Of a stretch of DNA of 64,000 nucleotides, positions 7,919 to 63,668 are shown piece after piece. Origin of the DNA: Haliotis rufescens. Lineage: Eukaryota. Position 1 is the stretch's first letter. Each line of letters starts with the position of its first letter. A program made the translations under genes and the position numbers. The stretch is from contig NW_025963779.1 of assembly GCF_023055435.1 (NCBI RefSeq), forward strand, positions 30,938,001 to 31,002,000, given 5' to 3'. Under the pieces are notes generated by a model. That model was given only the letters and a program-made list of their open reading frames with translations, searched no databases and was not told the DNA's origin.

Positions 7919-10900
7919 TTATTGAATGCAAGAAGCTACGTATCCCGTGAGTCCGACAATGGCTTCAAACAGAAGAAAGGACACTAGTAACAGCAGACTG
8001 TACAGGTATATTGAGACATGATGTAGACTCCGGAACTGGAATACTGCAACCGGTTGCCGTAACTTGTTTGCGTTTTCAAAAACCGTTAGGTTAAAGCCAG
8101 ATCTTTGAGACGGGGAGTTATAATCCAGATCCGGAATATGTGACTCTTCCCATGGGAACAGGTAGAACTGGTACCGGTGTATTCCTCTAGGTGGCGCTGG
8201 GGGATGATAATCTGAAAGCGGATCAGTGTATAGATTACAGTATATTCACTAACAACGTCTCGCCTTCAGCGTGACTCCTATATTCGCCGAGAGTCTTTCC
8301 GTATCGTACAAGGTCTATATGAGGAAAATGTGGTATCATGTAAATTTTAATTGGCAAGTATAATAATATTTTCTATTCGTGATATGCAACAATTACGATG
8401 CGGAAACACGGGTAGTAATCTCTTTATGACTTAAATAATCGACGTTGAAGCTAACCCGTGAAGATCCGGGGTAGAATAGGTCTTCAGCAACCCATGCTTG
8501 CCGTAAAAGGCGACTATGCTTGTCGTAAGAGGCGATTAAGGGGATCGGATGGTTGGGCTCGCCCACTTGGTTGATGAATGTCATCGTATCCCATTTGCGT
8601 AGATCGATGCTTATGATATCAATCACTGCATGGATTGTCTGGACCAGACTCGATTATTTATAGACCGCCGTCATACAGCTGGAATATTGCTGAGTACGGC
8701 GTTAAACAACAAACAAACAAACAAACAAACCATAATGTCACTCAGACTTTGTAAATCCAATACAGCAAACAGCCCGATGTAGTGTACATGATTCGAAGCC
8801 ATGGTTGTGTACAGAAACTCACACACATTTAGAACCACCTTCCTTACATAATGGGAAGGGCGGTCGGGTAGCCTAGTGGTTAAAGCGTTCGCTCGTCACG
8901 CCGAAGACCCGGGTTCGATTCCCGACATGGGTACAATGTGTGAAGCCCATTTCTGGTGTCCCCCGCCGTGATATTGCTGGGATATTGCTAAAAGCGGCGT
9001 AAAACCATACTCACTCACTCACTCACTCACATAATGGGAAACGTCAGACAAACGTTTCTTAATCTAAGGAGAGGGGCGGTGGGTCAGCCTTGTGGTTAAA
9101 GCGTTCATGCCGAAGATCCGGGTTCGATTTCCCACATGGGAACAATGTGTGAAGCCCATTTATGGTGTACCCCCACTGATATTGTTGGAATATTGCTAAA
9201 AGCAGCGTAAAACTATACCCACTCACTTCTGCAAGGAGACATTTCATCGATGTATTGAGTTTATTAAAAGTGGTTCCTGCAAGCTAACCTCATCTACATA
9301 TTCATTTGTACGTTTATCTGATTGGTTTATGGCACTAATAACACTATAACTTAATAACAAGTGTCATCTGAAGATGACAAATCCTCCTGGTTCATCTTAA
9401 GCCCCTGGTTTATACAAGTAACAAGTTTGGGTGTAAAATCGTTCACGGTTTTACGGGGGGGGGGGGGGGGGAGGGGGGTAAAAATGTCCATGAACAAATT
9501 ACATTGTTAGCATTTTATATATTGTCGTATTATAAATTATAATCACAGGCGTATGTGTCATTTATCTATATATAATTACAGGGAAACCTCAACTCATAGA
9601 CAAGGGGTTTTGTACATATGTCGAGTAACCTAAAGTTTCAGAAAGGCATATTGCCTATACGTGACCATAGTGTCGATATGATATCTGCCGGGACGATACA
9701 GTTGCATAGTCTTAAACGATATATCGAGACAATGGCGTTCGAGTGAGCGAGTGAGTATGGTTTTACGCCGCTTCACACAATGTTCCTATGTCGGGAATCG
9801 AACCCGGGTCTTCGGCGTGACGAGCGAACGCTTTAACCACTAGTCTACCCGACCGCCCCCAATGGCGTTCGAGTTAACAAGTTTTCACTGTAAGTAAGGA
9901 AGCAAAACTGGACTTACATAAACACATGTTAGTAAATTAAAATAGTGTGTACAAGTCAAACGTTTAGTTGGGTTTTGTGTGGCGGAAGAGTCATTTATGT
10001 TTGGAACGAGGTTTCACTTGAATGAAATCACCACCAGAAGAAAACATTAACCGTTATTTCACGAGCCAGGCAACCGACTTACTGAGCATATTTCTTTCCG
10101 GAACCAATACACCTTTGATCTGCAAAATATGCAAACAACATTTTAAATTATTGATGTTTTACGTGATGAACTATCAAGATATCTACACGAATCGACGGAT
10201 ATTACAGTCGTCATATGTACACCCCATGCTTGCCATAAAAGGCATCTAAGCTTGTCGTAAGAGATCGGGTGGTCAGGCTCGCTGACTTGGTAGATGCATG
10301 TCATCGTATACCAATTGCGTGGATCGATGCTCATGATGTCAGTCACTGAATTGTCTGGTCCAGATTCGATTATTTACAAACTGCACTCATATAGCTGGAA
10401 TATTACTGAGTGCGGCGTTAAACAACACACAAACAAAAAAATGTAAAAAGCGCGAGTTGATTTTCGAGTAAAGGAAGCGGACCTAAATGCCCTTAACATG
10501 GCTTTTCAGAGATCTGATTTTAATGATGAATGCCGCCATAAAATATCTTATTTTCACGCGGAGCGGGAGAGATAAATATCCACTTCATGTCCGACATCAG
10601 GTTTTTGTGTGTGTAAATTCAAATATTCGGTTGTTTTCTGAAGACGTAAGACATATAAGATATAGTGTATAAACTAGGTTGTAATTAGTTAAAAAAAACT
10701 GTCCACCTGAACGTAAGTTTAGGTTAATGGAATAAACAGTCGCTATAAAATGAGATCTTTATTTTGCCCCGATACCTCTCTCGGCCAAATCTCCTTAAAT
10801 ATCAGATTTAAATGTTATTGATCAAATACTTTAAAAAAACATAAAAATAAATAAATTAAAAAAAATAATGATAGTTTAAAAGGAAGATTATGTGAGTGTG

Positions 10901-19000: not shown

Positions 19001-22000
19001 TGTGGTTGTTTATAGGCTGGTATCAAAATTGCACTTGGCAAGTAATTTAGAAGCAAATCATGTCGAAAAGCCTACGAATCGCCCCTCTGTCGCTTTTATA
19101 CAGCCAGCCTGCTATTAACTGTCCCATCCAGAAACTTCTAGAAAGTCTGCCGTCTTCATGTTTACAACAAGGGCAGATAACTCTGGAACATTCCACCAGC
19201 TGATGTTGACTGCTGTGACCCATTGATGACCACAGTCATGCAATGTGCCGTGTATTGTTTTCTTCAGTTAAACACTTGACTTGCCTCTGCTTGTGTTTGT
19301 GACAGGCAACACTGCTGGGGCAGGATACGCTTACCTTATCGCGAATACCTGGTATCATCACTATTAGATAGTTGTTTATAAACACATGCTGATAATATAG
19401 TCGTTCAAAGGATTTTGTCGCGTTTATTTAGATATGAAGACGAAAGCTGGTATTTGACGGCGAACGATTCAAGTGACGTCATCACACTTGAGGTCGAGGA
19501 CGCCGACTTAGAGTACTCCAGTACATGTGCGTACGACTACGTCATCCTATTCGACGGTAGGTGACGTCATCTCTGGAATGACCCATGTGCGGTCATTGGG
19601 CTGACTGGGGCCCCAGTGTACCACGCCTGCCGTAAGTGAGTGAATGTTGTTTGACGACGCAATATATGATGGTGGTCTGCCATAAGAGTCGGTTACAATG
19701 TGGATCGGATGGTTTTATGTTTGACCTGCTGGTTGTGTATCGACGTACGTACGCACACAAAGTCGTGTACAGTAGCTCGTTGTCAACTATTGATTTGTCT
19801 CGCATAAACACATTCAAACAGTTTTGTGGTTGAGAAATTTCCAAATCTGACGCATCAGCGAAAAAATTGATACAATATCCTATTTTGACTTGCCTTCAGG
19901 TGCTAATGTTATAGTCAAGATCATACAATGGACTTTACTTTAAGCAGAGATTTCTTCTGGTTATGGAAAAGGTTATTTACGGGTCCAGTGATATAACTGT
20001 AACATATCTGTCGTAAGGTCACATTCAACATTCACTTCTCAATTGTGTTACCCGTGAAGATCCGAGGTAGAACAGATCTTCAGCAACCCTTGCTTGTAGT
20101 AAAGGGCGACTAACGGAATCGGGTGGTCAGGCTCGCTGACTTGCTTGATGCATGTCATCGATCCCAATTGCGTGGACCGATGCTCATGATGTCAATCACT
20201 GGATTGTCTGGTCCAGACTCGATTATTTACAGACCGCCGTCATATTGCTGAGTGCGGCGTTAAACAACAAACAAACCAAACCAAACCTCATTTGTGTTTA
20301 ATGCACAATACAGCCATCAGCGAGTGGAGGTAAGTAGATGTCGCCTTAATAAGACGCACTGTGTGATATTCTAGGGGATGGGCCTGGAAGACGCATTTTG
20401 GGGGGAATCTAACAAAACACATTTCACAACATATTTTTTGTAGGACCAAGCATGTTCTGCGAAAATATAATTTCTACTGATTTTACTAGTTACTTCTGGT
20501 ACACATTACTTTGTAAATAAATCTGGACTGTTAACTCCGACAGTGTCTGTCTTCGCACAACGAAGATGTTACGACGCATGGCTTTTGCGATTATCTGAAA
20601 TGCATCGGGTCTGTTAATTGTTAATTTGGTTGTCAAATTTACATGTGTATATGAATAATCTTGATTTGTTATAACCAAGCTCCTTTTCATTGCTAGACAT
20701 GTACATGAATACTATTACTTTTAGTCGCACTCAAGCGTTGTAAGAAGAAAGGATTGGATATCAATGTCTTTCATTCTTTCAAAGAGGCATCTTTTCAGAA
20801 ACGTGTACATTTATCAAGCGACATCCTAGTGTAGGTGCTGGAACGTCGCACTGAAAGAAGAAAAGTCATTCATGGCTGTATATTATAATGATGGGAATTA
20901 TCATTCTACTGGTGTTTCTTTTCTGCAGGTCCCAGCTCTCTAAGTCCAGTACTCAAGAGGTTTTGCGGCACCAGCGAGCCCACGGTTACCAGTAGTTCCC
21001 AGCACGTGCACGTCAAATTCAACACTGACGGCACCGTGAATAGACGTGGATTCAACATCAGATACTGGAGTGCGTGGTCAAGGTCATTTAGAATCGAATA
21101 AGTGATAGCAAGATTAGCTAGGGGCCTTTTGACAGAATATTTTCAAAAGATACCATTTATTTCTCATAAACGAGGAGCAGATACTTTTCTAGAACCATTT
21201 ACTTACTTTATGAAATTCCCAACTCGTGTTTGAAGAACATCAACAACTTCCAACATTACGTTCGCCATGGATCCTGGGTCTTTCTCACAGACTAAGATGG
21301 TAAACCGAAAAGTGTAAAAATCCAACTCGCTCACCTCACTTGTCCGAAATAACGTTTTGAATGAATTTTAATACATATCCACGTGACTGTCTTTATAAAA
21401 CAAACGGTAACGTAAGCAATTCTAATCATTTACTTAGTTTATTTCTGTCAATGTAAACTATCGATATGCAGCTTATTAACAGGCAATTGTCATCCAGATA
21501 TAATGGTCGTGTTTTTGTGTTTAACGCTGCACTGTGCAATATACCAGCTACAAGACAGCGGCTTTATTAACAGTTGAAACACATGGGTTGTTCGATTACA
21601 CGTTACACCCATGCAAGCAAGCTTTCTTAAGATTCAGCGGAAACCCATGCTTAACAAATTTGCATCTATGTTGTCATTAAGCGACTGCAGATGAGCTTTC
21701 GAATAATTTGAATGTTTCTTGTTTTTTCGCAAGCGTATTTAGAGTAAGCTTTGTTAAAACCATGCTAAGACTACACGATCATGATAATTATGAATAGATA
21801 CAAAAGATAACTGTTTGTTCTCTTTATCAGGCAGTGTCAAACTGACTTCTCCGAGTCCATTCAGTTCTCTTCCGATTCTTATAACCGCCGGAGTCGTAGT
21901 TGGGGCTGTAGTCGTCTTCGGCTTCGTACTCATTTGGTACCACTGTTGCTCCAAGAAACACGGGACGAACAGACAAGTGCGGCCTGCGACTCATGTTTCC

Positions 22001-37745: not shown

Positions 37746-40712
37746 AAGCCTCATTCAAGATTTGATCCTAACCAAACCACATGAAGCGTCCTAAAATCTC
37801 CTTCTAGACCCAGTCTAGACTTGACACTGAGATATTCCCATTATCATTTAGTCTGTGTTTGTTTGTTGGTTGGTCAACCCCGCAAATTTCTTTTAAAATA
37901 ATTAAAAATCAATGCTTCAGACATTTACAAAAAGGAAATTGCCTACCACAAAAATCGCATAAAAAATATCTGCTTTTGTAGCTGTAGAGAATATCAAATG
38001 GCCATTGTCGGTTCCAAACGACGATGTAAAACCCTACTCACTCCGTTTTCCTCTACATGGCATAGTTATTTTCCTTTTGGGTAAGATCATGTCCCTGTGC
38101 TAAACATACCTAGGGGTCATAATTTGAATGAATTTAAGGAGTGAACACTGAACTCGGATGATCATGTTACGGGTAGGGGAACATAGACTCGCGCACAGCC
38201 ATGACGTCACACCTAATACCCCTCGAGGCACGTCGACAACTAAAAATCCTGAAAACGTAAATCCATTAGCAACATGTTGGTCAAATAGTTTGGTTACAAT
38301 ACGTGAACGTCACACACTCATGGCAGCGGTAGTGTAAGTAATGGTGTTGGTTAACTGTGTTCATATTGTCTTGTATTCTAACTAAACGCACCATATGAGA
38401 GAATTGACACTTTCATGAATATGTTTGTTGTCAGGGGAGACGTTACGTCCTTGTGTTCGTTGACCCAGATGCTCCCCACCCGGGCGCCAAATCCCACGAT
38501 AGCAACTACCTCCACTACGCCGCTGTGGTTAAAAAGGTAAGTAGAAGTTTGTTTTTAGACATCTCGTTAAAATTTGGCACAGTGAAATAAAAAAAAAATG
38601 AATTCAAGGACCTGTATACCGTTTTTTCGTTATTGAAATAGGTAACCGTGTTGAAAAAAATCAATTTGTGAAGAAACTCCACTGCAACAAGTGACTTTGA
38701 CTCATAGCTGCCTTGGGCTTCATGGTGTATGTTAAGTACAATTTCCAATAAAGGGTGTGCTTTTACTTCTGATTAGGAATTTTTTAAACGTTCGTCCTTA
38801 ACCAAGGCGTGACGATTCTCTCCTCTCCTCCATGGCAATCTAGATCTGTTGCTGCAGCATCCGAGTGTCATACTACGTCTGTGTAATGTTATGTATGACC
38901 ATGAATGCAGACTAACAGACGATAGTAACTAGTAGTTGAGATTTTATCCACGCTTCACTTAATTGTTTTCAGAGGAATGGCGAATTGAAGCCTTCGAAAG
39001 TACTAGTTCGTAAGTATTAATGAGATATATACTAGTATACATATTGCTTTAATATCGCCCATGAATGGATCTGCTCAGCGTGCGCTCGAATTTAATTCTC
39101 AACCTCATGGGGAAAATACAACCAATGGGGGCACGGGTGGCCCTGTCTTCAAAGGCACCGCAATTCGCTGTGCAGAGTTGCGTCGCTTGGGCACGCCAGA
39201 AACCTGAAATTGTTTGTTCCCGTTTCGACCCGATTATGTTTCTAGGTTTGTCGGCACCGTACCTGTGCTCGCGGGTTTCGGTAGCGTGGTAAATGTCTGA
39301 GACCTGCATCACTTAGGGCTTTCTTCCTACATTAAGCAGTAGCCCTGTGGACCCGTGAAGATTCCGGGGTAGAATAGGTCTTCAGCAACCCATGCTTGCC
39401 GTAAAATGCGACTTTGCTTGTTGTAAAAGGCGACTAACGGGATCGGGTGGTCAGGCTCGCTGACTTGGTTGATGCATGTCATCGATCCCAAATGCGTGGA
39501 TCGATGCTCGTAATGTCAATCACTGGATTGTCTGGTCCAGACTCGATTATTTACAGACCGCCGTCATATAGCTGGAATATTGCTGAGTGCGGCGTTAAAC
39601 AACAAACAAACCAAACCAAACAAACAGTAGCCCTGTGACATGACGGGGCCGGATTACTGTTAAAAGCGGCGTTAAATCCAACTCACTCGCTCAACACCAA
39701 ATCTGCCTTATGAGGCGCTAGATGGTTAACAGTCACCATTTCAGCATGAACAGAGGCATATTTCGTGCAAAGATGCGCATTTAACTATCAACAGTGATAA
39801 TTGCATTTTATCCTACTTAAAAGAAGTGAAGGACCACCCGATATTTTCATGACGGATTAATCACAGTAATATGAAATAATCGGGTGGCCTTAACTTCTTT
39901 TGACTGGTATATATAATAATGAACATAAGCGTGTGTATCGCGCACTTGTTGTCAAATGTTATAAAGACGTGTTGTTATTATCTTCCCGAGGCAAGGGCGT
40001 TAACTGTCTATAAAAGACCAGTTTCCACCCTTTCCGAACTAGGCTGGAATTTCCTGGCTCGATCGTAGCACTACAAGTGGCTCTTACGAGTGATGTCCCT
40101 TCCATGTCGATCATATTGACCAATCAGATTTCAAATTGCTTCAAACAAAAAGGCAGCGCCCTGTCAAGACCATCAGATCTAGAGTCAAGATCTATCTAGA
40201 AATAAAACGGGTCTTACCTCGCGGAGTGCATCAGATAACTTGAGCACCTTGATTTGCCAAATATCTGTCGACACCCAGTTGGCGGTTCACATGCTTTGCA
40301 AATCCTTCAACCGACAGAAATCTATGTTGTTTACGAACCGGATGTCTAGTTCTTTTACGCGGTTTTGATTGGACTATACATAGTCAAGTTAAAGTGTAAC
40401 TCCGGAACTCCAGCCTAGTTCGGCAAGGGTGGACTTGTATAGTCAGTTAAAGCCCTTGCCTCGGGAAGATGGTTGATATGCTTGTAACTGAAATACAATA
40501 TTTGTGTCGCACATCTAGATTACCGTGGCCCACATCCACCAAAAGGCACACACCGGTACCAGTTTTATGTATTTCGCTGGAAATCCTGCAAGAAACCAGT
40601 GCTCCACAATTCGGACAAGTCGAGAGGCCACTTCAATTTGAAGCGGTTCAAGAAGGAAAACCATTTGAAAAAACCGGTTGCGGTGTTTCAGCTGAAGGTC
40701 CCGCACACTTAA
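37327..40712 (+). CDS. PEBP-C: secreted, highly cationic PEBP-family protein (~180 aa). Exons 37327-37536, 38435-38536, 38973-39009, 40519-40712
   Basis: MYATGLLVVCFLQLVGGSDA-HRKVDNTLCTKRSPPKL... / GRRYVLVFVDPDAPHPGAKSHDSNYLHYAAVVKK / RNGELKPSKVLV / HYRGPHPPKGTHRYQFYVFRW...PVAVFQLKVPHT*. GT-AG introns; AATAAA at ~40759. An in-frame upstream ATG exists at 37270. Confidence 0.9.
39350..39624 (+). mobile_element. SINE family 2 (~250-280 bp, non-tRNA structured 5' head), full length, nested in a family 3 SINE. About 25 copies or fragments in the window
   Basis: 13-bp TSD CAGTAGCCCTGTG; begins GACCCGTGAAGAT and ends GCGGCGTTAAA(CAAA)n; no A/B boxes. Confidence 0.9.
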
Positions 40713-43513: not shown

Positions 43514-46103
43514 ATGTACGCGACAGGACTTCTTGTCGTCTGCTTCCTGCAGCTGCTTGACGGGTCGGAAGGCCTCATCGCGGACTGTAACGTTGACAAT
43601 ATCCTCTGCACAAACCCATCACCCCCCAAGTTGGATGTTTACTACTCCGGGCAGCAGATCGCATGTAACACTCTTCTGCATATCGGAGACGTTACCAGTG
43701 TGCCACGTATAGAGTTCAAACAAGGGAGGGAAGTGAGTATTGACCTTTTGATCTACCATGTGAATCACTGTTGGATTTGTATGCTGTTGTCGGTTATATT
43801 TTAATATGGCTCCCAGATTAAAGGGTATCTGACACATGAGGCAATAACGATTACAACGGTGCACGTGTAGTGATTTGACTTGGCAATTAATATTTCTTTG
43901 TGAAAATTTTGTGGTATTTAACACATACAGTAAAGTACGGTTATAACGAACTCAAAGGGACTACTTATTTTAGTTCGTTATAACCGTAGTTCGTTATAAG
44001 CATATATACAGTATAATAACAGCTAATAGTCGGGACCCAAAAAGTAAGTTCGTTATATCCGTCAGTTCGTTATAAGCGTGTTCGTTATAACCGTAGTTTA
44101 CTGTACTTGATGTGATCCTAACCATACCGCATTCCACACAATTGGGATACAAAGAAATGCTGTCAAACAAGTCACCGAGCCTGACCACCTGATCCATTCA
44201 GTCGGCTCTTACGATAAGCATGGGTTGCTACAGTTCTATTCTAACCGGGATCTTCAAGGCCAGACAAGCATAGGTTGCTGGGGACCTATATTGTCACCCG
44301 GGATCCTCACGGGGTTGGTCAGCACCTTATCGGAACCAAACCACATTTATTCGGCCCCCACCCCACCTTTATGTATTTACGTGCTTTATGTATCCGTTTG
44401 TTGTCAGGGTGAAAGTTACGTCCTTGTGTTCGCGGACCCAGATGCTCCCTACCCGTGCGCCAGCTCCGACGGCAGCAACTACCTCCACTACGCCGCTGTC
44501 GTTAAACAGGTAAGTGAAAGTTTCTTCTTTGATAGGCATTTAGAAGTTGGACTACTAAGTAAGGATAAGATTTATGGATGAACAACTTCTTTATTACAAT
44601 TAAGAGCAACGTTTCGGTGTAGGTTACTAAGTGGAAGTTTGTTTTACACCTCACATGTCAGTTACGCAATAATATAAGGTTTATGAATTCGTAGTCCGTA
44701 ATATCTTTACTGAAATCAAATAGATAAACCTCACTCCGACAGATGAATATGGCTCCTATTTGCTTTGGTTACAAACTTTACTACAAAATTGAAGAATTTA
44801 AGTTAGGCGATTTTATACACGTTCGTTCTTGACCATGCACAGTGTTTCTCGTATATTATCTCCTCCATGGACGTCTATGCCTGTAGTATCTGGATGTGAA
44901 AATGCGTCTGTGTAATATTTACAAAGACTTTGAATGCAGCCCAGCAGTATCTGATTTGTTTGTTTATTTGTTGTTTAACGCCGCATTAAGCAATATTCCA
45001 GCTATATGACGGCGGTCTGTAAATAATCGACAATCCTGTGATTGACCTCATGAGCATACGATGACATGCATCAACCAAGTCAGCTAGCCTGACCACCCGA
45101 TCCCTTTAGTCGCTTCTTATGACAAGCATAGTCGCCTTTTATAGCAAGCAGTTGAGTTGCTGAAGATCTATTCTACCCCGGATCTTCACGGGTCAAGTAT
45201 CTGGTAACCAGAAGTTGAAAAATTAATCCACATTTCACTTATTATGTTTCGCAGACGAATGGCGTTTTGAAGCCGTCGCAAGAACTCGTTCGTAAGTATT
45301 TTTGAAACCTATATACGTATCGCTCTACTAATAACAGTAATAATAATAATGATTGTTTTTAATGCCAGATCCGCCCTTTAAAACGTGCACAAAACTCTAC
45401 ATTATCGCACGGGTCTATGGATCACCGCGCGTTTTAATTTAATTCTCAGCCTCCTTGAGAATATACAACCAAACCTGCCGTATGAGGCGCCAGAATGTTA
45501 ATAGTCACGTTACCATAAATATCATCATGAACAAAGGCAGAGGTTTGTTTGACACCGCACTCGACAATATTCCTATATAGACGGTAAATAATCGAGTCTG
45601 GACCAGAGATCCCAGCGATTGATACCATGAGCTTGGGATACGATGACATGCATCAACCAAGTCAGCGAGCCTGACCAACCGATCCTGTTAGTCGCCTCTT
45701 ACGACAAGCATAGTCGCCTCTTACGGCATGCATGGGTTGCTGAAGAACTGTTCTACTCCGGATATTCAGGAGTCGAACAGAAATTTGAAGTAGGAAGGTT
45801 ATATATATACACATGTGATTAATTGATGTTTATACAAGGTAATGTTCACACAAGACATAAAGTATAATAGCCTGATTGATGTACAGAAATATTTTTGTTG
45901 CACATCCAGATTACCGTGGCCCACATCCACCAAGAGGCACACACCGGTACCAGTTTTATGTCTTTCGCTGGACATCCAATCAGAGACCGGTGCTCCACAA
46001 CTCGGACCGATCGAGAGGCCACTTCCAACTAAACCGGTTCAAGACGGACAACCATTTGAATGAACCGGTTGCGGTGTTTCAGGTGAAGGTCCCGCATACT
46101 TAA
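43514..46103 (+). CDS. PEBP-D: secreted PEBP-family protein (~183 aa), recent paralog of PEBP-C. Exons 43514-43732, 44408-44509, 45255-45291, 45910-46103
   Basis: MYATGLLVVCFLQLLDGSEG-LIADCNVDNILCTNPSPPKL... / GESYVLVFADPDAPYPCASSDGSNYLHYAAVVKQ / TNGVLKPSQELV / HYRGPHPPRGTHRYQFYVFRW...VFQVKVPHT*. Exons 2-4 are the same sizes as in PEBP-C (102/37/194 nt). Confidence 0.9.
43928..44104. mobile_element. Same Tigger-like MITE, in PEBP-D intron 1
   Basis: TA-CAGTAAAGTACGGTTATAACG ... CGTTATAACCGTAGTTTACTG-TA. Confidence 0.8.
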
Positions 46104-55500: not shown

Positions 55501-58500
55501 CGGGGGACACCAGAAATGGGCTTCACACATTGTACCCATGTCGGGAATCGAACCCGGGTCTTCGGCGTAACGAGCGAACGCTTTAACCACTAGAGTACCC
55601 GACCGCCCCTTGGGGTCTGTAAGACAGACTATGAGGTCCCCAGCACCCTATTGCTTTTTGGAGACTTGTTTTAAATTGGATCGGGAGGTACGGACCGCGT
55701 CACACGACTGATGGCGTGTCATCGTGTCTGGTTTGCCCGGCCCCGATTCTATGAGGAAGCCCGTGATACTAATTGGGGAAATAGGGGTCGACGAGTGAAC
55801 ATATCTCGGAGTGAACAATAGCTCCGTCACAGTGTTATGTTTACTGCAGTGAAATATCAAGTGTTATGTTCACATAAGGAAAATAATTTATGGATGTTAC
55901 CGTCTTTGTTATCAGGAACACAACGTTTCAGAGTATATGGTAACTCCTTCATCTTAATTCATCTGATGGAGTTAGCATATACTTTTCCTTATGTGTATCA
56001 CTTCTAAATGCCTTTCAAAGACTTGTTATGTTCACTGCAATGAAGGGGGCACGGGTGGCCCAGTCGTCTAAGGCACCGCAATTCGCTGTGCAGAGTTGCG
56101 TCCCTTGGGCACGCCCAAAACCTATGATTGTGGGTTCGAATCCCGGTTCGCCCGGATTATGTTTCTAGGTTTGTCAGCACCACACCCGTGCTCGTGGATT
56201 TCACCGAAGGGGTAAACGCCTGAGACCTGCATCACTTGGGGCTTTCCTCCCACATTTAACTGACACGCCGTGATATAACTGGAATACTGTTAAATGCGGC
56301 GTTAAACCCAACTCACTCACTGCAATGAAAATATCACTTTGCTCAACTTTCTCAGTCTTTCACACTGTTTCAGTGTCGTGAGTGAAAATACACCTTGACA
56401 GACGGCGGTGTGTCAATTATCGAATCTGAACAAGATAATACAATGACTGACATCATTAACATCGATCTACGCAAATGAGATGCATATAGATTGTATGATA
56501 TCGCTATCAACCTGCACGGCACCGAGCGCGACCATCCGGGCTATTTTGTTCGCCTCTTACGACAAGCTTAGGTCTGCTGGGGACCTTTACTCTAGCCCGA
56601 AATACCCCCGGGTCGCCTCTTTAGTGCATCCTTTAGTTTTGGTATATCAGGAGAAGTTGCACAACCAGCTGTAGGTGATTAAGCTGCACTTGAACATCTG
56701 TGTCTATAAAGAGCCGCTATGGTCAGTCATGCGCAACATGACATAGGCTTTTAAATCACAAAAGCACAGCAGTGTGGTGTATTTTATGACAAGTCATTTG
56801 TGTGTGACCGCTGAAGCTGAAAGTGTCACATACAGACATGAGAGTCACACGAGCCTTTATCAACATTGCGTTACTTGACTTGCGTTTGGGGGGGAGGGGG
56901 CGCTCTGGCGTCTATAGGTGATAGCAGACCCAAACAACAGCCTGCCTATCCGAACACACAGTTGATGACATGTTGTTCCGACGCCTTATCGGGCCTGAAT
57001 TAGTATTGCTTATAGAAGGTTGTCAACTTGACATTGATACGCTCTTGTGGAATTGANNNNNNNNNNNNNNNNNNNNNNNNNNNNNNNNNNNNNNNNNNNN
57101 NNNNNNNNNNNNNNNNNNNNNNNNNNNNNNNNNNNNNNNNNNNNNNNNNNNNNNNNNNNNNNNNNNNNNNNNNNNNNNNNNNNNNNNNNNNNNNNNNNAT
57201 CTACTCCCCAACACGGGGCGGTCGAGTAGTCTAGTGGTTAAAGCGTTCGCTCGTCACACCGAAGACCCTGGTTCGATTCCCGACATGGGTACAATGTGTG
57301 AAGCCAATTTATGGTGTCCCCCGCCGTGATATTGCTGGAATATGGCTAAAAGCGGCGTTAAACCAAACTCACTCACTCACTCTGGTGTCCCCCGTGTGAT
57401 ATTGCTGGAATATTGGTAAGAGCGGCGTATACCATACTCACTCACTCCTCCTCAACACCATAACACACCCATCAATAACAAAATAAAATAAAAATATGTC
57501 AAAAACTATTCTGTCATGAATTTGGAAATAGTCTACTTTGAATGAATCGCCGCGAATAGCTGCAAAATTGCTGATGCGGCGTTAAGCAATATTCACTCAC
57601 TCACTCACTCACTTTGAATGAAACGGCCGCATCACCGTGAAGTTTATTATCATACAATAGGACTTTCTCAGTCGTTGAAGGGGGCACGGGTGGCCCAGTC
57701 GTCTAAGGCGCCGCGATTCGCTGTGCAGAGTTGCGTCTCTTGGGCACGCCAGAAACCTATGATTGTGGGTTCGAATCCTGTTTCGCCCCAATTATGTTTC
57801 TAGGTTTGTCAGCACCATACCCGTGCTCGTGGGTTTCACCGAAGTGTTAAACGTCTGAAACCTGCAATTTTAGAAATTTGAACATATTTGTTAGAAATAT
57901 TTAGAAATATTCTTTATCATAATCATTATTTACAGACCATTTCGTAATGTTCCAAATGTTGAGCTATTAAAAATCAAATTCATTTTAAATATGCTCTTAA
58001 TTATTTATTTAATGTAGTAATATTTATTAAGCAGTTGTCTTATTTCTTATTCAAATGAACAGACAAACAAATTGTGAAATCTATCTCCTGCTTTGTCACC
58101 TTTTTTTTCAGAGTGGTCATTTTTTTCAAAAAATGATATTTGTTATCCTTCTGTCTGTTTCAATCGGTGAATTTTGATTGGAGGTTCTAACTTAAGCACA
58201 ATTCTGGGATCGGAACCAAACTCATTAAAGCTTTGAAACGCATTAGTATGACGTTATTATGTATACAGAGTCCAAAATCTATATATGGTAATAAATCATG
58301 TTGTGTCTTAACGTCAACTGTCAATATTCAATATTCAGCGAAATATTTGGACATTAACTAATAATATTAGTGCACAGGCCGCAATAAGGTATTAACGGTA
58401 GTATATGGTGATTTAAGTGCGAACGGGCAATACGCTATAGGTATTAGAAAAGTATTCGTACGTCACAACTGAACGACAGGTCATCTTCTTTGTCCTCTTT

Positions 58501-61500: not shown

Positions 61501-63668
61501 AAAACCATAGTACTAGCCCACTCAGATACCATGCCACAGTTTAACACGATTACCCACTCAGAAACATTATACTGACTCGCAGCCGGCAGGTCCTTGTTTT
61601 ATCCTCTAAATGACGAGTGCAGGCAGGGTAACAACAAATATCAACGTTTAACGTCTTTTGCTGTGACGCGCTCTATCGACTAGACCGCGGTCGGCATCTC
61701 AACAATTAAAGTAGTGCTATCTATATAAGTATTGTTATATTCTTTAAGGCATTCGAAAGTTGAAAATCAAGTTCCATATAAATAACACATCTTCGAAATG
61801 GAACTCGCCTGAATAGAAAGGAATAAAAAAAAATTAGACTGAAATGAAATTTCAAGACGATTGTTAGGGTCGTGATTAGGTGAAATAACACGAATGAGAT
61901 TTTATATAAGGTCACATCATGAATCTCCTTTTCCCAGGGCATCCTTTTTTATGGAACTGACTTTGGCTCCGAAGGTCTACCCGTACCCCGAAAGCCGGGG
62001 CATCTATGGTCTGTTCTACACGAAGAATCCCCAAAGAATAATGATTGGTTGTTTTCCGCTAAATCCGCCATGTCTATTTTTAATCTGACGGCAACCTTCA
62101 AGCGACAGTCACATTACTCCTTCCCTACCATGTGGCTCCCCGTAAGTATACAAGAGAACCAAACTGTTTCTGGATAAAATATTGACACTAGAACAATTAT
62201 TCATCTTTGTTGCCGAATAGCACAGCTGGCATCAACGTTCCCTTCAAACACAACGTGGGGATTCCGGTTTGGAATAGGCTCCCAGCAATGGTTATCTTAA
62301 CAGGCGACTAAATGGATCGATGACTTGCATTTGGTTGACTACTTGAACCCTGCCGGTGTTGGACGTTACTCTTAATATCCGGGGCGGTCGGGTAGCCTAG
62401 TGGTTAAAGCGTTCGCTCGTCACGCCGATGACCCGGGTTCGATTCCCGACATGGGTACAATGTGTGAAGCTCATTTCTGGTGTCCTCCGCCGTGATATTG
62501 CTGGAATATTGCTCAAAGCGGCGTAAAACCATACTCACTCACTCACTAATCTTAATATCCGTAACTGGATTATCTGGTCCAGACTCCATCACATACAGAT
62601 CGCCCCCATATAGCTGGAATATGGCTGATTGCAGCTTTAAGAACAAACCAACAAACAGCCCTTGAACCAAAGCACAGATTCATATAAAGGCTTGGCTATG
62701 CCAGTTTACCTATGAAGTCAATTTACTCTGCCGCCTGTGGATACGTTCAATTTCAAGTACCTAAGTGATTGGTCCGACTTTACACTCAAATTGTCCGATT
62801 CATCAACACTGGAAATGGGCGATAGCCCCGGTCTCCTATAGAAAAAGTCAAACCCGGGTAAAGCTGCGAAAATCGTGTTACTTCTAGATAATTTTTTACC
62901 ACAGGCCTGTTGTTATTCTGACGAACCTAACTGATACTTTTGTCAACCGAGACCATTTAAGTTTGGTGAATAAGAGTGAGTGAGTGAGTGAGTGAGTGAG
63001 TATGGTTTTACGCCGCTTTTAGCAATATTCCAGCAATATCACGGCGGGGGCCACCAGAAATGGGCTTCACACATTTTACCCATGTCTGGAATCGAACCCG
63101 GGTCTTCGGCGTGAGGAGCTAACGCTTTAACCACTAGGCTACCCGACCGCCCCTGGTGAAAAAGAGGGCAATCAGAAAAACACACCATAATATGTAATTC
63201 GAAAATAACCATGATACACTTTATTAAAATTATACTCACTGAAGTCTTGTTCGTGATTACAAAAATCAGGGACAACGGCGCAGATCACTGTATTTGCTAC
63301 AAAGCACTGGTTTGTCTGGCCTAACATATTGGGTATTTTCGGAATTATAGGAGTCTTAAATGAGGACAGGAAGCATCCTGGAAACGTTATGACCAACAAT
63401 AAAGTTGCTATCAGTAAAGTGTTCAATCTCTTTTCATGTTCAATAATCATCGTAACTTGCAGGATGAGCGGGCTTTGACCGACACCCAGTACATGGTGTC
63501 CATCGCAGAGAAGAACCGCCTGAGAAGGGAAGGTCTGGCTCCTGTGGTGTTCGTCCACATGGACTGCCACACAGCCTCCGACCGCAGCCACTACATGAGA
63601 CTGCTGAATCAGTTCATAAAAATAGACTCCTACAGTGACTGTGAGCATAACAAGGATTTCCCTTCAAA
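49512..63668 (+). CDS. FUT10/11: FUT10/FUT11-like GT10 fucosyltransferase (type II membrane), 5' part; continues past the window. Exons 49512-49576, 58506-58588, 59701-59775, 60370-61448, 61938-62141, 63463-63668
   Basis: Short basic tail MAGCQRMAYRCMARYSRFFKSR, then TM LFLCLVGLAIMCVTVW, a long repeat stem, and FUT10/11-type motifs PVILSW, GILFYGTDF..GLPVPRKPGHLWSVLHEESPKNN, IFNLTATFKRQSH, LAPVVFVHMDC..SDR..Y...IKIDSYSDCEHNKDFP. All junctions are GT-AG and phase-consistent. Exons 1 and 3 are inferred from frame and splice fit. Confidence 0.85.
50674..51100. mobile_element. Same MITE, inverted, in fucosyltransferase intron 1
   Basis: Reverse complement of 46183-46603. Confidence 0.8.
53095..53381 (+). 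mobile_element. SINE family 3
   Basis: TSD ATGCTTCGATGC. Confidence 0.85.
55438..55609 (-). mobile_element. tRNA-derived SINE family 1
   Basis: Near-identical reverse copy; TSD GGGTCTGTAAGA. Confidence 0.85.
56045..56317 (+). mobile_element. tRNA-derived SINE family 3 (~280 bp). Copies at ~7627, 16481, 18665(-), 28374, 39126, 41280(-), 46983, 53095, 57679, 59270-59650, 59895
   Basis: A box TGGCCCAGTCGTCTAAGG, B box GGTTCGAATCC, 3' TTTCCTCCCACATT..GATATAACTGGAATACTGTT..GCGGCGTTAAACCCA(ACTC)n; TSD CACTGCAATGAA. Confidence 0.9.
57057..57198. other. Assembly gap (142 N)
   Basis: Run of N. Confidence 1.
60630..61110 (+). repeat. Coding 78-nt (26-aa) tandem repeat in the fucosyltransferase stem
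   Basis: CAGAATGTTAATCCTGGTCA recurs at 60714, 60792, 60870, 60948, 61026; unit QNVNPGQPNAAANIVQMNAAPQPALP. Confidence 0.95.
62380..62547 (+). mobile_element. tRNA-derived SINE family 1, nested in an old family 2 copy
   Basis: TSD TCTTAATATCC. Confidence 0.85.
62974..63153 (-). mobile_element. tRNA-derived SINE family 1
   Basis: Near-identical reverse copy with (GAGT)n end. Confidence 0.85.

What the first reader, a model, noticed from the sequence alone, without database searches (positions are those of the whole stretch)
39350..39445. Abundant SINE with a non-tRNA, covarying pseudoknot head: candidate self-cleaving ribozyme or structured 5' module
SEEN: Family 2 (~25 copies) has no A/B boxes. 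Full-length copies bounded by TSDs (39350, 28013(-), 20050, ~45194(-)) all start at (G)ACCCGTG. The head folds into four elements: an outer stem CCCGT/ACGGG; an inner stem TGAAGATC/GGTCTTCA; a pseudoknot between loop GGGT and downstream ACCC; and a hairpin GTCG-TAAGAGG-CGAC followed by (C)TAA just before the closing strand. Older copies show compensatory changes in the inner stem: GAAG/CTTC becomes GAGG/CCCC (44264-44314, minus), GGGG/CCCC (56546-56614, minus) and GGGG/TCCC (~62255); a G-U pair becomes A-U at 20050. KNOWN: several non-LTR retroelements (R2, RTE, L1Tc/ingi) define their 5' ends with HDV-like ribozymes, in which P4 is followed by a J4/2 strand such as CTAA carrying the catalytic C. 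INFERENCE: this topology resembles HDV P2/P3/pseudoknot/P4/J4-2, but I cannot find a canonical P1. It may therefore be a variant or new ribozyme, or an internal promoter structure, that lets a Pol III-independent SINE release itself from host read-through transcripts.
Basis: partly seen in the sequence, partly recalled or inferred. Interest (0 to 1): 0.85.

Follow-up and report, generated by a model that had tools for sequence, protein, structure and literature searches.

The report
Known abalone SINE with LINE-derived head
This is the 5' head of a very abundant abalone SINE of the already published "LP-SINE" type, whose head was copied from the first ~70 bases of a LINE rather than from a tRNA. 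One hairpin in it is clearly conserved as RNA structure, but nothing I could test supports a self-cleaving ribozyme.

Summary
The repeat family is real. The element spans 39350-39624 (275 bp) and has a 13-bp target-site duplication and a CAAA/CCAA-type tail. It starts at (G)ACCCGTG and has no A/B boxes and no Rfam match. A random 200 kb of the same genome holds about one fragment per 5 kb.

It is not a new kind of element. Matetovici et al. 2016 (PMC4758252) described "LP-SINEs" in Haliotis and other molluscs, with a ~70-bp head homologous to the 5' end of Nimb/I/RTE LINE 5' UTRs. I confirmed the LINE link independently. An abalone I/Nimb-like LINE copy (L047) and a metagenomic LINE (L051: ORF1, endonuclease, RT) carry the same module at their 5' edge.

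Only part of the proposed structure holds:
- **Inner stem:** it covaries across lineages (14 double-change cells against 5.2 in shuffles).
- **Pseudoknot and the two small hairpins:** none shows covariation.
- **Outer stem:** it is strong only in the young abalone clade.

About 80% of copies carry a 22-nt tandem duplication inside the head. Heads also occur as tandem arrays.

HDV-like membership fails: there is no P1 and no covariance-model hit. The most likely role is a portable LINE 5'-terminal start or promoter module with a conserved RNA hairpin. A ribozyme remains a low-probability reading.

Other first-stage readers flagged the same family at least seven times elsewhere in this genome.

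The parts
39337..39349 (+). 5' copy of the 13-bp target-site duplication
   Evidence: The same 13-mer lies at 39625-39637.
39350..39445 (+). Head of the SINE: the LINE-derived 5' module with an internal 22-nt duplication, as in most abalone copies
   Evidence: Covariance model R1 scores 81.7 bits at 39348-39451. Homologous to the 5' module of the LINE copies L047 and L051.
39357..39383 (+). Arm 1 hairpin: 5' strand 39357-39364, conserved 12-nt loop 39365-39376, 3' strand 39377-39383. This is the only helix with covariation.
   Evidence: Pair types across lineages: (10,31) AU/GC/CG, (9,32) AU/GC, (13,28) UG/UA/CG/GC. Double-change cells 14 against 5.2 +/- 1.9 in shuffles, 0 of 2000 reaching the observed value.
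39384..39396 (+).
   Evidence: Predicted in the MFE and RNAalifold structures. Conserved in sequence, no covariation.
39392..39413 (+). First copy of the 22-nt duplicated unit (3' strand of arm 2 plus the arm 3 hairpin); decayed in this copy
   Evidence: 87 of 109 abalone heads carry two units. The LINE versions and 22 SINE copies carry one.
39414..39435 (+). Second copy of the 22-nt unit. Its arm 3 hairpin is 39420-39423 / 39431-39434, with 7-nt loop TAAAAGG.
   Evidence: Sequence conserved in all lineages, no covariation.
39352..39356 (+). 5' strand of the outer stem (CCCGT)
   Evidence: Pairs with ACGGG at 39437-39441 in the young clade. Older SINE copies and the LINEs have AAATGG-type sequence there, which allows at best a shifted 4-bp helix.
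39437..39441 (+). 3' strand of the outer stem (ACGGG), preceded by the conserved GACTAA
39446..39557 (+). SINE body; not shared with the LINE copies
   Evidence: BLAST of the element against window and loci. No similarity to L047 or L051 beyond the module.
39558..39600 (+). 3' stem-loop domain shared with two other SINE families of this genome
   Evidence: Tail-only hits to query positions 209-251 belong to a tRNA-derived family and a third family.
39601..39624 (+). Terminal CAAA/CCAA-type repeats
39625..39637 (+). 3' copy of the target-site duplication

Best explanation
The stretch is the head of one copy of an LP-SINE, a short non-autonomous retrotransposon. Its first ~70 nt were captured from the extreme 5' end of the 5' UTR of an I/Nimb-type LINE instead of from a tRNA. 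Its 3' end is a stem-loop plus short tandem repeats, which a LINE reverse transcriptase uses for target-primed insertion.

Shown here: the family's anatomy and abundance, the homology of the head to LINE 5' ends, and selective maintenance of one hairpin (arm 1) with conserved loops.

Inferred: the module works as a portable 5'-terminal 'start' unit. Most likely it is an internal, LINE-type promoter that makes each new copy transcribable from its own first base (G1/A2). The conserved hairpin would then act on the RNA, for example in stability, in protein binding, or in completing the 5' end.

It is not an HDV-like ribozyme. In abalone the main lineage duplicated a 22-nt piece of the head. It also gained two substitutions that close the head into a cloverleaf-like four-way junction.
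For: - **Published description.** LP-SINEs are described in Haliotis, Littorina, Ostrea, Saccostrea and scallops. Their ~70-bp head is homologous to the 5' ends of Nimb-17_LMi, I-3_DR and RTE-9_CPB (PMC4758252).
- **LINE contig L051.** The module sits at the contig start, 83.6% identical over 55 nt to the abalone LINE version. It is followed by ORF1 with CCHC knuckles at 809-2041 and by ORF2 with Exo_endo_phos, Exo_endo_phos_2 and RVT_1.
- **Abalone LINE copy L047.** It has RT and RNase H, and its RT region is 54-57% identical to L051. The module lies at its 5' boundary.
- **SINE hallmarks.** TSDs in 39 of 57 copies, a fixed start, 5'-truncated copies and a tandem-repeat tail.
- **No small-RNA origin detectable**.
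- **Arm 1 covaries**. RNAalifold on 12 lineage representatives gives three hairpins plus a short closing stem, at -18.3 against -8.5 +/- 2.6 kcal/mol for column shuffles, z = -3.8.
- **Tandem heads.** Four heads in L028:2283-2600 and 74-nt arrays in L052 resemble promoter monomers.
Against: - Promoter activity is not shown by anyone. The 2016 paper proposes it from position alone.
- A covarying stem with conserved loops is what an RNA-level function predicts, not a DNA promoter. Part of the function is therefore unexplained.
- I could not align the window family to the published Hdi/Hmi_LP consensus, because figures and supplements are not held. The polyA-like hexamer quoted for Haliotis (AATATA) is not found literally in this family's tail.
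- L051 is cut within the module, so its 5'-terminal position is inferred.
- No RNA data could be obtained.
Confidence: 0.6

Rival explanations
1. The module is a self-cleaving ribozyme, either a divergent HDV-like fold or a new class. It cuts at its own 5' edge and releases LINE and SINE RNA from host read-through transcripts.
For: - The 5' end is precise.
- The module is portable between LINE clades whose proteins differ, which suits a protein-independent activity.
- A structured hairpin covaries and its loops are conserved.
- There is precedent in R2, RTE and L1Tc, where a 77-nt module is both promoter and ribozyme.
Against:
- The alternative P1 is confined to the young clade and leaves J4/2 without a C and P1.1 without a partner (by-hand threading of the sequences).
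- No ribozyme covariance model hits at E<=10.
- The pseudoknot does not covary and is absent in L052.
- Most copies tolerate a 22-nt internal duplication.
- Tandem head arrays exist in which the upstream heads were not removed.
- Position 1 is heterogeneous: G in 75% of copies.
Confidence: 0.08
2. The module is an RNA handle for the retrotransposition machinery. It would be bound by LINE-encoded protein or needed to finish reverse transcription and join the 5' end, as the R2 5' RNA is.
For: RNA-level conservation of arm 1 with invariant loops. The position at the extreme 5' end of LINE RNAs.
Against: - The module is shared by LINEs of different clades (Nimb, I, RTE).
- In abalone it is combined with a 3' tail that does not match the 3' end of the module-bearing LINE copy L047.
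- A clade-specific protein partner is therefore unlikely.
Confidence: 0.14
3. In the young clade the head mimics a tRNA cloverleaf. Host RNase P would then trim the 5' leader exactly at G1.
For: The single-unit head is 72 nt and its MFE fold is a four-way junction with a 5-7 bp closing stem and a 7-nt loop in the third arm. The closing stem was gained by two substitutions in the clade that later expanded.
Against: - The tRNA model gives no hit at E<=10.
- Arm lengths are wrong: an 8-bp first arm, and 2-4 nt between the third arm and the closing strand.
- The closing stem is weak or missing in the older SINE copies, L047 and L052.
- RNase Z would then be expected to cut the head off the body.
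Confidence: 0.05
4. The head is an unrecognised Pol III promoter derived from a small RNA that is not in Rfam.
For: The 275-nt consensus has no run of four T. All classical SINEs are Pol III units.
Against: No A or B box in the head and no Rfam family. The same module heads 4-6 kb LINEs, which Pol III could not transcribe through. Absence of TTTT in 275 nt is expected by chance about 40% of the time (my estimate).
Confidence: 0.06

Closest known systems
LP-SINEs (LINE-promoter SINEs) of gastropods and bivalves, including Haliotis Hdi_LP/Hmi_LP (Matetovici et al. 2016, PMC4758252)
   Same: Same genus. A short TSD-flanked element with a tandem-repeat tail and a non-tRNA head of ~70 bp homologous to the 5' end of Nimb/I-type LINE 5' UTRs. 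The tail is shared with tRNA-derived SINEs.
   Different: I could not align to the published consensus. This report adds the 22-nt internal duplication in most copies, the covarying arm 1 hairpin, the lineage-specific closing stem and the tandem head arrays. None of these is mentioned in the paper's text.
Pr77 hallmark / L1TcRz of trypanosomatid L1Tc, ingi, NARTc and SIDER elements
   Same: A ~77-nt module confined to the extreme 5' end. It is shared by otherwise unrelated LINEs and by their short non-autonomous derivatives.
   Different: Pr77 has demonstrated promoter activity and a demonstrated HDV-like fold. This module has neither demonstrated, it fails the HDV-like features, and there is no sequence similarity.
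HDV-like ribozymes at the 5' ends of R2, RTE and Baggins LINEs, and R2 SIDEs (PMC3414825)
   Same: A structured 5'-terminal RNA in non-LTR elements, kept by internally deleted non-autonomous derivatives.
   Different: There is no nested double pseudoknot, no P1 starting at +1, and no match to any HDV-like covariance model.
SINEU / Tx1 LINEs sharing U1 or U2 snRNA-derived 5' ends (Kojima 2015, cited in PMC4758252)
   Same: The same 5' module is shared by a LINE family and a SINE family, probably through template switching.
   Different: There the module is a recognisable snRNA with a Pol II/III snRNA-type origin. Here no cellular RNA source is detectable.

Membership tests
LP-SINE (Matetovici et al. 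2016) | Short non-autonomous retroelement with variable TSDs and 3' terminal tandem repeats | tested here: met
   275 bp. TSDs of 7-14 bp in 39 of 57 copies. CAAA/CCAA-type tails. 5'-truncated copies.
LP-SINE (Matetovici et al. 2016) | Head not derived from tRNA, 5S, 7SL or snRNA | tested here: met
   No Rfam hit at E<=10, no ARAGORN tRNA, no A/B boxes in the head.
LP-SINE (Matetovici et al. 2016) | First ~70 bp homologous to the 5' end of a LINE 5' UTR (Nimb/I/RTE) | tested here: met
   The module lies at the 5' edge of LINE contig L051 (ORF1, EN, RT) and of the abalone RT/RNase H LINE copy L047. R1 scores are 54.5 and 67.4 bits.
LP-SINE (Matetovici et al. 2016) | Sequence identity with the published Hdi_LP/Hmi_LP consensus and with Nimb-17_LMi, I-3_DR and RTE-9_CPB | not testable with these tools
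   Figures and supplements are not held. Repbase is not available.
HDV-like self-cleaving ribozyme | P1 helix of about 7 bp starting at the cleavage site (+1), with its 3' strand directly after P3 | tested here: not met
The only complement of nt 1-7 near the head is the outer-stem strand at 65-71. It is present in the young clade only and lies 2-3 nt away from the preceding hairpin.
HDV-like self-cleaving ribozyme | Catalytic C in J4/2, and P1.1 between L3 and J1/4, in the same fold as P1 | tested here: not met
   With P1 taken as the outer stem, the strand after the next hairpin (TTGGTTGAT) has no C, and L3 (TAARAGG) has no C to pair with J1/4. This is by-hand threading of the sequences.
HDV-like self-cleaving ribozyme | Match to a family covariance model (HDV, CPEB3, drz families) | tested here: not met
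   No hit at E<=10 in 39250-39700, in L027:1850-2150 or in L052.
HDV-like self-cleaving ribozyme | Mg-dependent self-cleavage giving a 5'-OH at +1 | not testable with these tools
   Needs an in vitro assay.
Other small self-cleaving ribozymes (hammerhead, hatchet, twister, twister-sister, pistol, hairpin, VS, hovlinc) | Match to the Rfam model of the class | tested here: not met
tRNA-derived SINE (SINE2) | tRNA-like head with A and B boxes | tested here: not met
   The best B-box match in the head has 4 mismatches, and the tRNA model gives no hit. The window's two tRNA hits (8862, 62386) belong to a different SINE family.

The most novel reading that the evidence does not exclude
The ~70-nt 5'-terminal module shared by I/Nimb/RTE LINEs and LP-SINEs across phyla is a new class of 5'-end-defining RNA. 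It would be either a self-cleaving ribozyme unrelated to HDV or a structure that recruits a host nuclease. The covarying arm 1 and the invariant loops would form its core.
Probability: 0.1. Interest if true: 0.85.

Novelty: already known. Interest (0 to 1): 0.33.

Why it matters
LP-SINEs are the only reported SINEs whose head comes from a LINE, so they may be SINEs that do not depend on Pol III. In red abalone this family makes up roughly 4-5% of the genome by my sample, so whatever the head does works very well.

The module is conserved at the 5' tip of LINEs from molluscs, insects, fish and a turtle, according to the 2016 paper. Its function has never been tested.

This report shows that one hairpin is kept by compensatory changes while its loops stay fixed. 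That points to an RNA-level role and gives a concrete target for mutagenesis. It also removes the HDV-like label, which would otherwise be repeated each time this very common repeat is met in the scan.

Tried and rejected
- **RNA evidence.** No runs could be named, so read laying was not possible.
- **LINE DNA from protein hits.** The full-length LINE proteins found by the search of protein representatives could not be traced to DNA.
- **More genome sequence.** The abundant intact 1230-aa LINE ORFs listed could not be read.
- **LINE partner for the 3' tail.** I checked tail-only hits and their upstream regions and found none. The 3' end of L047 does not match the SINE tail.
- **Module as endonuclease-coding sequence.** I briefly read the module in L047 this way and rejected it. 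L051 places the matching endonuclease segment about 2.4 kb downstream of the module, and L047 is internally deleted twice.
- **Looser pattern scans.** Scans of genome contigs and viral contigs gave 18 loci. All were chance matches without the flanking parts of the module.
- **HDV descriptor script.** My own loose descriptor returned many spurious solutions in every sequence. It is evidence neither way.
- **Covariance-model alignment A2.** It mis-registers arm 1 in copies with the extra T. I recounted arm 1 from anchored strands instead.
- **Literature.** A first abalone SINE search returned only unrelated papers. No paper links Nimb LINEs to a ribozyme, and no paper follows up LP-SINEs.
Full report
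**What is at the coordinates**

The stretch 39350-39445 is the first 96 nt of a 275-bp repeat at 39350-39624 on the + strand.
- A 13-bp direct repeat flanks it, at 39337-39349 and 39625-39637. It ends in CAAA/CCAA-type repeats.
- It was inserted into a copy of another SINE family, whose two halves lie on either side.
- BLAST of the element against the window gives 58 hits, about 35 of them family fragments. A covariance model of the head finds 29 head instances in the window.
- The same genome holds copies 94-97% identical on many contigs.
- In 200 kb taken at fixed round-number coordinates on other contigs, not chosen for content, I found 42 family fragments, 15 of them with a head. That is about one per 5 kb, or on the order of 10^5 copies in 1.33 Gb.
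I did not verify the species.

**Retroelement hallmarks**

- All full-length copies begin at ACCCGTG. A G precedes it in 38 of 51 copies. Where the base is not G, the TSD often runs up to the A.
- The RNA 5' end is therefore fixed to within one base, but position 1 is heterogeneous.
- Many copies are 5'-truncated, as expected for target-primed reverse transcription.
- The last ~45 nt before the terminal repeats form a stem-loop domain. It is shared with a tRNA-derived family and a third family, which end in ACTC repeats instead.

**The head is not a small-RNA derivative**

- Rfam at gathering thresholds finds only two tRNA hits in the window, both in the other SINE family.
- With permissive thresholds (E<=10), the head and its flanks match no family: no tRNA, 5S, snRNA, HDV-like, hatchet, twister, pistol or hammerhead.
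- ARAGORN finds nothing.
- In a consensus of 31 young copies, the head has no A-box match with 3 or fewer mismatches, and its best B-box match has 4. The consensus has no run of four T.

**It is a published kind of element**

Matetovici et al. 2016 (PMC4758252) describe "LP-SINEs" in Littorina, Haliotis diversicolor and H. midae, Ostrea, Saccostrea and scallops. These are TSD-flanked short elements with tandem-repeat tails.
- The authors propose a promoter role from position alone and say it is untested.
- They point to the trypanosomatid Pr77 module, which is both promoter and HDV-like ribozyme, as an analogy.
- I found no follow-up paper on LP-SINEs and no paper linking Nimb LINEs to a ribozyme.
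- The paper's figures and supplements are not held, so I could not align to its consensus.

**Independent confirmation of the LINE link**

Two earlier first-stage notes suggested that a LINE 5' UTR carries the motif, and I tested this.
- **Abalone copy L047.** On the minus strand of locus L047, a LINE copy with RT and RNase H domains has the module directly at its 5' boundary, at 8802-8883 (R1 67.4 bits).
- **Metagenomic contig L051.** A strict pattern scan of metagenome contigs gave two loci. L051 starts inside the module. It continues through ~750 nt of UTR into an ORF1 with three CCHC knuckles (809-2041), then an ORF2 with Exo_endo_phos, Exo_endo_phos_2 and RVT_1 that runs off the contig.
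- **Relationship of the two.** The RT region of L051 is 54-57% identical to L047, and the two modules are 83.6% identical over 55 nt.
- **L047 is a deletion derivative.** The comparison shows that L047 lost the region between the module and the endonuclease C-terminus, and a second region before the RT.
- **Second locus, L052.** It carries the module as 74-nt tandem repeats, 3.5 units in one place and 1.5 in another.
- **Controls.** A looser pattern scan of prokaryotic genomes and viral contigs returned only chance matches.

**Structure: what holds and what does not**

Most abalone copies (87 of 109) carry a tandem duplication of a 22-nt unit inside the head. The LINE versions and 22 SINE copies have one unit, which gives a 72-nt head.

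*Single-sequence folding.* The 72-nt form folds as a four-way junction: a closing stem, arm 1 (7-8 bp, 12-nt loop), arm 2 (4 bp) and arm 3 (4 bp, 7-nt loop). The stability is unremarkable: z = -1.76 for that form, -1.12 for the two-unit form, and -0.33 for the window copy.

*Lineages compared.* Four were available:
- the young abalone clade
- an older abalone clade with CC at positions 31-32
- the LINE copies
- L052

*Arm 1.* It keeps pairing through changes on both sides.
- Pair (10,31) is A-U, G-C or C-G.
- Pair (9,32) is A-U or G-C.
- Pair (13,28) is U-G, U-A, C-G or G-C.
- On 32 distinct haplotypes there are 14 double-change cells, against 5.2 +/- 1.9 in shuffles (0 of 2000 reach 14). Pairing is 81%, against 76% in shuffles. 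Relatedness inflates such numbers, but the changes occur in several separate lineages.
- RNAalifold on 12 lineage representatives predicts three hairpins and a short closing stem, at -18.3 against -8.5 +/- 2.6 kcal/mol for column shuffles.

*The other proposed elements.* The closing stem, the loop-loop pseudoknot, arm 2 and arm 3 together show less covariation than shuffles.
- **Closing stem.** It is paired in 55% of cells in the fixed register. Older SINE copies and the LINEs have an AAATGG-type strand there, which allows at best a shifted 4-bp helix. L052 has none.
- **Pseudoknot.** It rests on GGG/CCC and cannot form in L052.
- **Overall.** The head has one well-supported hairpin with invariant loops. 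Its two small hairpins are sequence-conserved, and the closing stem is specific to one lineage.

**Ribozyme test**

- In an HDV-like fold, P1 starts at the cleavage site and its 3' strand follows P3.
- If the closing stem is taken as P1, the next hairpin can serve as P4. The following strand then has no C for catalysis, and L3 has no C for P1.1. That P1 also exists only in the young clade (sequences).
- No ribozyme model matches.
- Most copies tolerate the 22-nt duplication.
- One abalone SINE copy has four heads in tandem (L028:2283-2600), and L052 has arrays. A ribozyme that efficiently cuts at its own 5' edge would remove upstream units from any transcript, so such arrays could not be passed on by retrotransposition. 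They could still arise at the DNA level.
- My loose descriptor script was uninformative.
- None of this excludes a new ribozyme class. I put that at about 8-10%.

**Most likely mechanism**

*Shown.* The SINE joins a LINE 5'-terminal module to a body and to a LINE-type 3' stem-loop with terminal repeats. It spreads by target-primed reverse transcription.

*Inferred.*
- The module is shared by LINEs of clades with different proteins.
- In abalone it sits on a SINE whose tail does not match the module-bearing LINE copy.
- Its function therefore probably depends on host machinery. The two candidates are an internal promoter that starts transcription at G1/A2, which is the published proposal, and self-processing.
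- The promoter reading fits the tandem-monomer behaviour and the one-base heterogeneity at the start.
- The covarying hairpin with fixed loops says that the RNA form also matters. The promoter reading does not explain this.

**Limits**

- The scan had noted this same head at least seven times on other pieces of this genome.

Noticed in passing
window 39230-39336 and 39638-39700: The LP-SINE copy is inserted into a copy of a third SINE family. That family's 3' part (GCGGCGTTAAA followed by ACTC-type repeats) resumes right after the TSD.
   Followed up: partly
window 8862-9040, 62386-62560 and many loci: Three SINE families share a ~45-nt 3' stem-loop domain: a tRNA-derived family, a second family starting CACCATACCCGTGC, and the LP-SINE. 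Their terminal repeats differ (ACTC in the first two, CAAA/CCAA in the LP-SINE). No LINE with this tail was found in 359 kb.
   Followed up: partly
L028:2283-2765: One SINE copy has four heads in tandem before a single body and tail. Each upstream head ends at GGCGACTAT, the same breakpoint as the common 22-nt duplication. Heads 1 and 2 share a derived G-to-C change. This could reflect template jumping onto head RNAs that end there, or DNA-level slippage.
   Followed up: partly
L052 (FXBE01019355.1), minus strand 1023-780 and 423-340: A metagenome contig from an unknown host carries the LINE 5' module as 74-nt tandem repeats (3.5 and 1.5 units). They sit inside a larger repeated unit that also contains a short ACCTGTGCATCCCGGAGT-type satellite.
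   Followed up: partly
L007:130-330, minus strand: The SINE 3' stem-loop domain alone forms a tandem array of three to four units.
   Followed up: no
L047:7583-8110, minus strand: The LINE copy is interrupted by a 176-aa ORF. By eye it resembles the C-terminal part of a Tc1/mariner-type transposase.
   Followed up: no
G000:C445:31.15-32.2 Mb: LINE endonuclease hits form a dense cluster, many within intact ORFs of 1227-1238 aa. It is concentrated in about 1 Mb of one contig, with smaller clusters on C101 and C46.
   Followed up: no
L045:1934-10000, L040:2750-6940, L032:1945-7830: Several kilobases of tandem repeats read as open frames of 300-1100 aa in several phases. They are satellite-like arrays, not genes.
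   Followed up: no
position 1 of the element (39350 and equivalents): The base before ACCCGTG is G in 38 of 51 copies and varies in the rest, far more than the ~5% divergence of young copies would give. Possible causes are two start sites, a 1-nt truncation, or an untemplated G of the kind seen on capped templates.
   Followed up: partly
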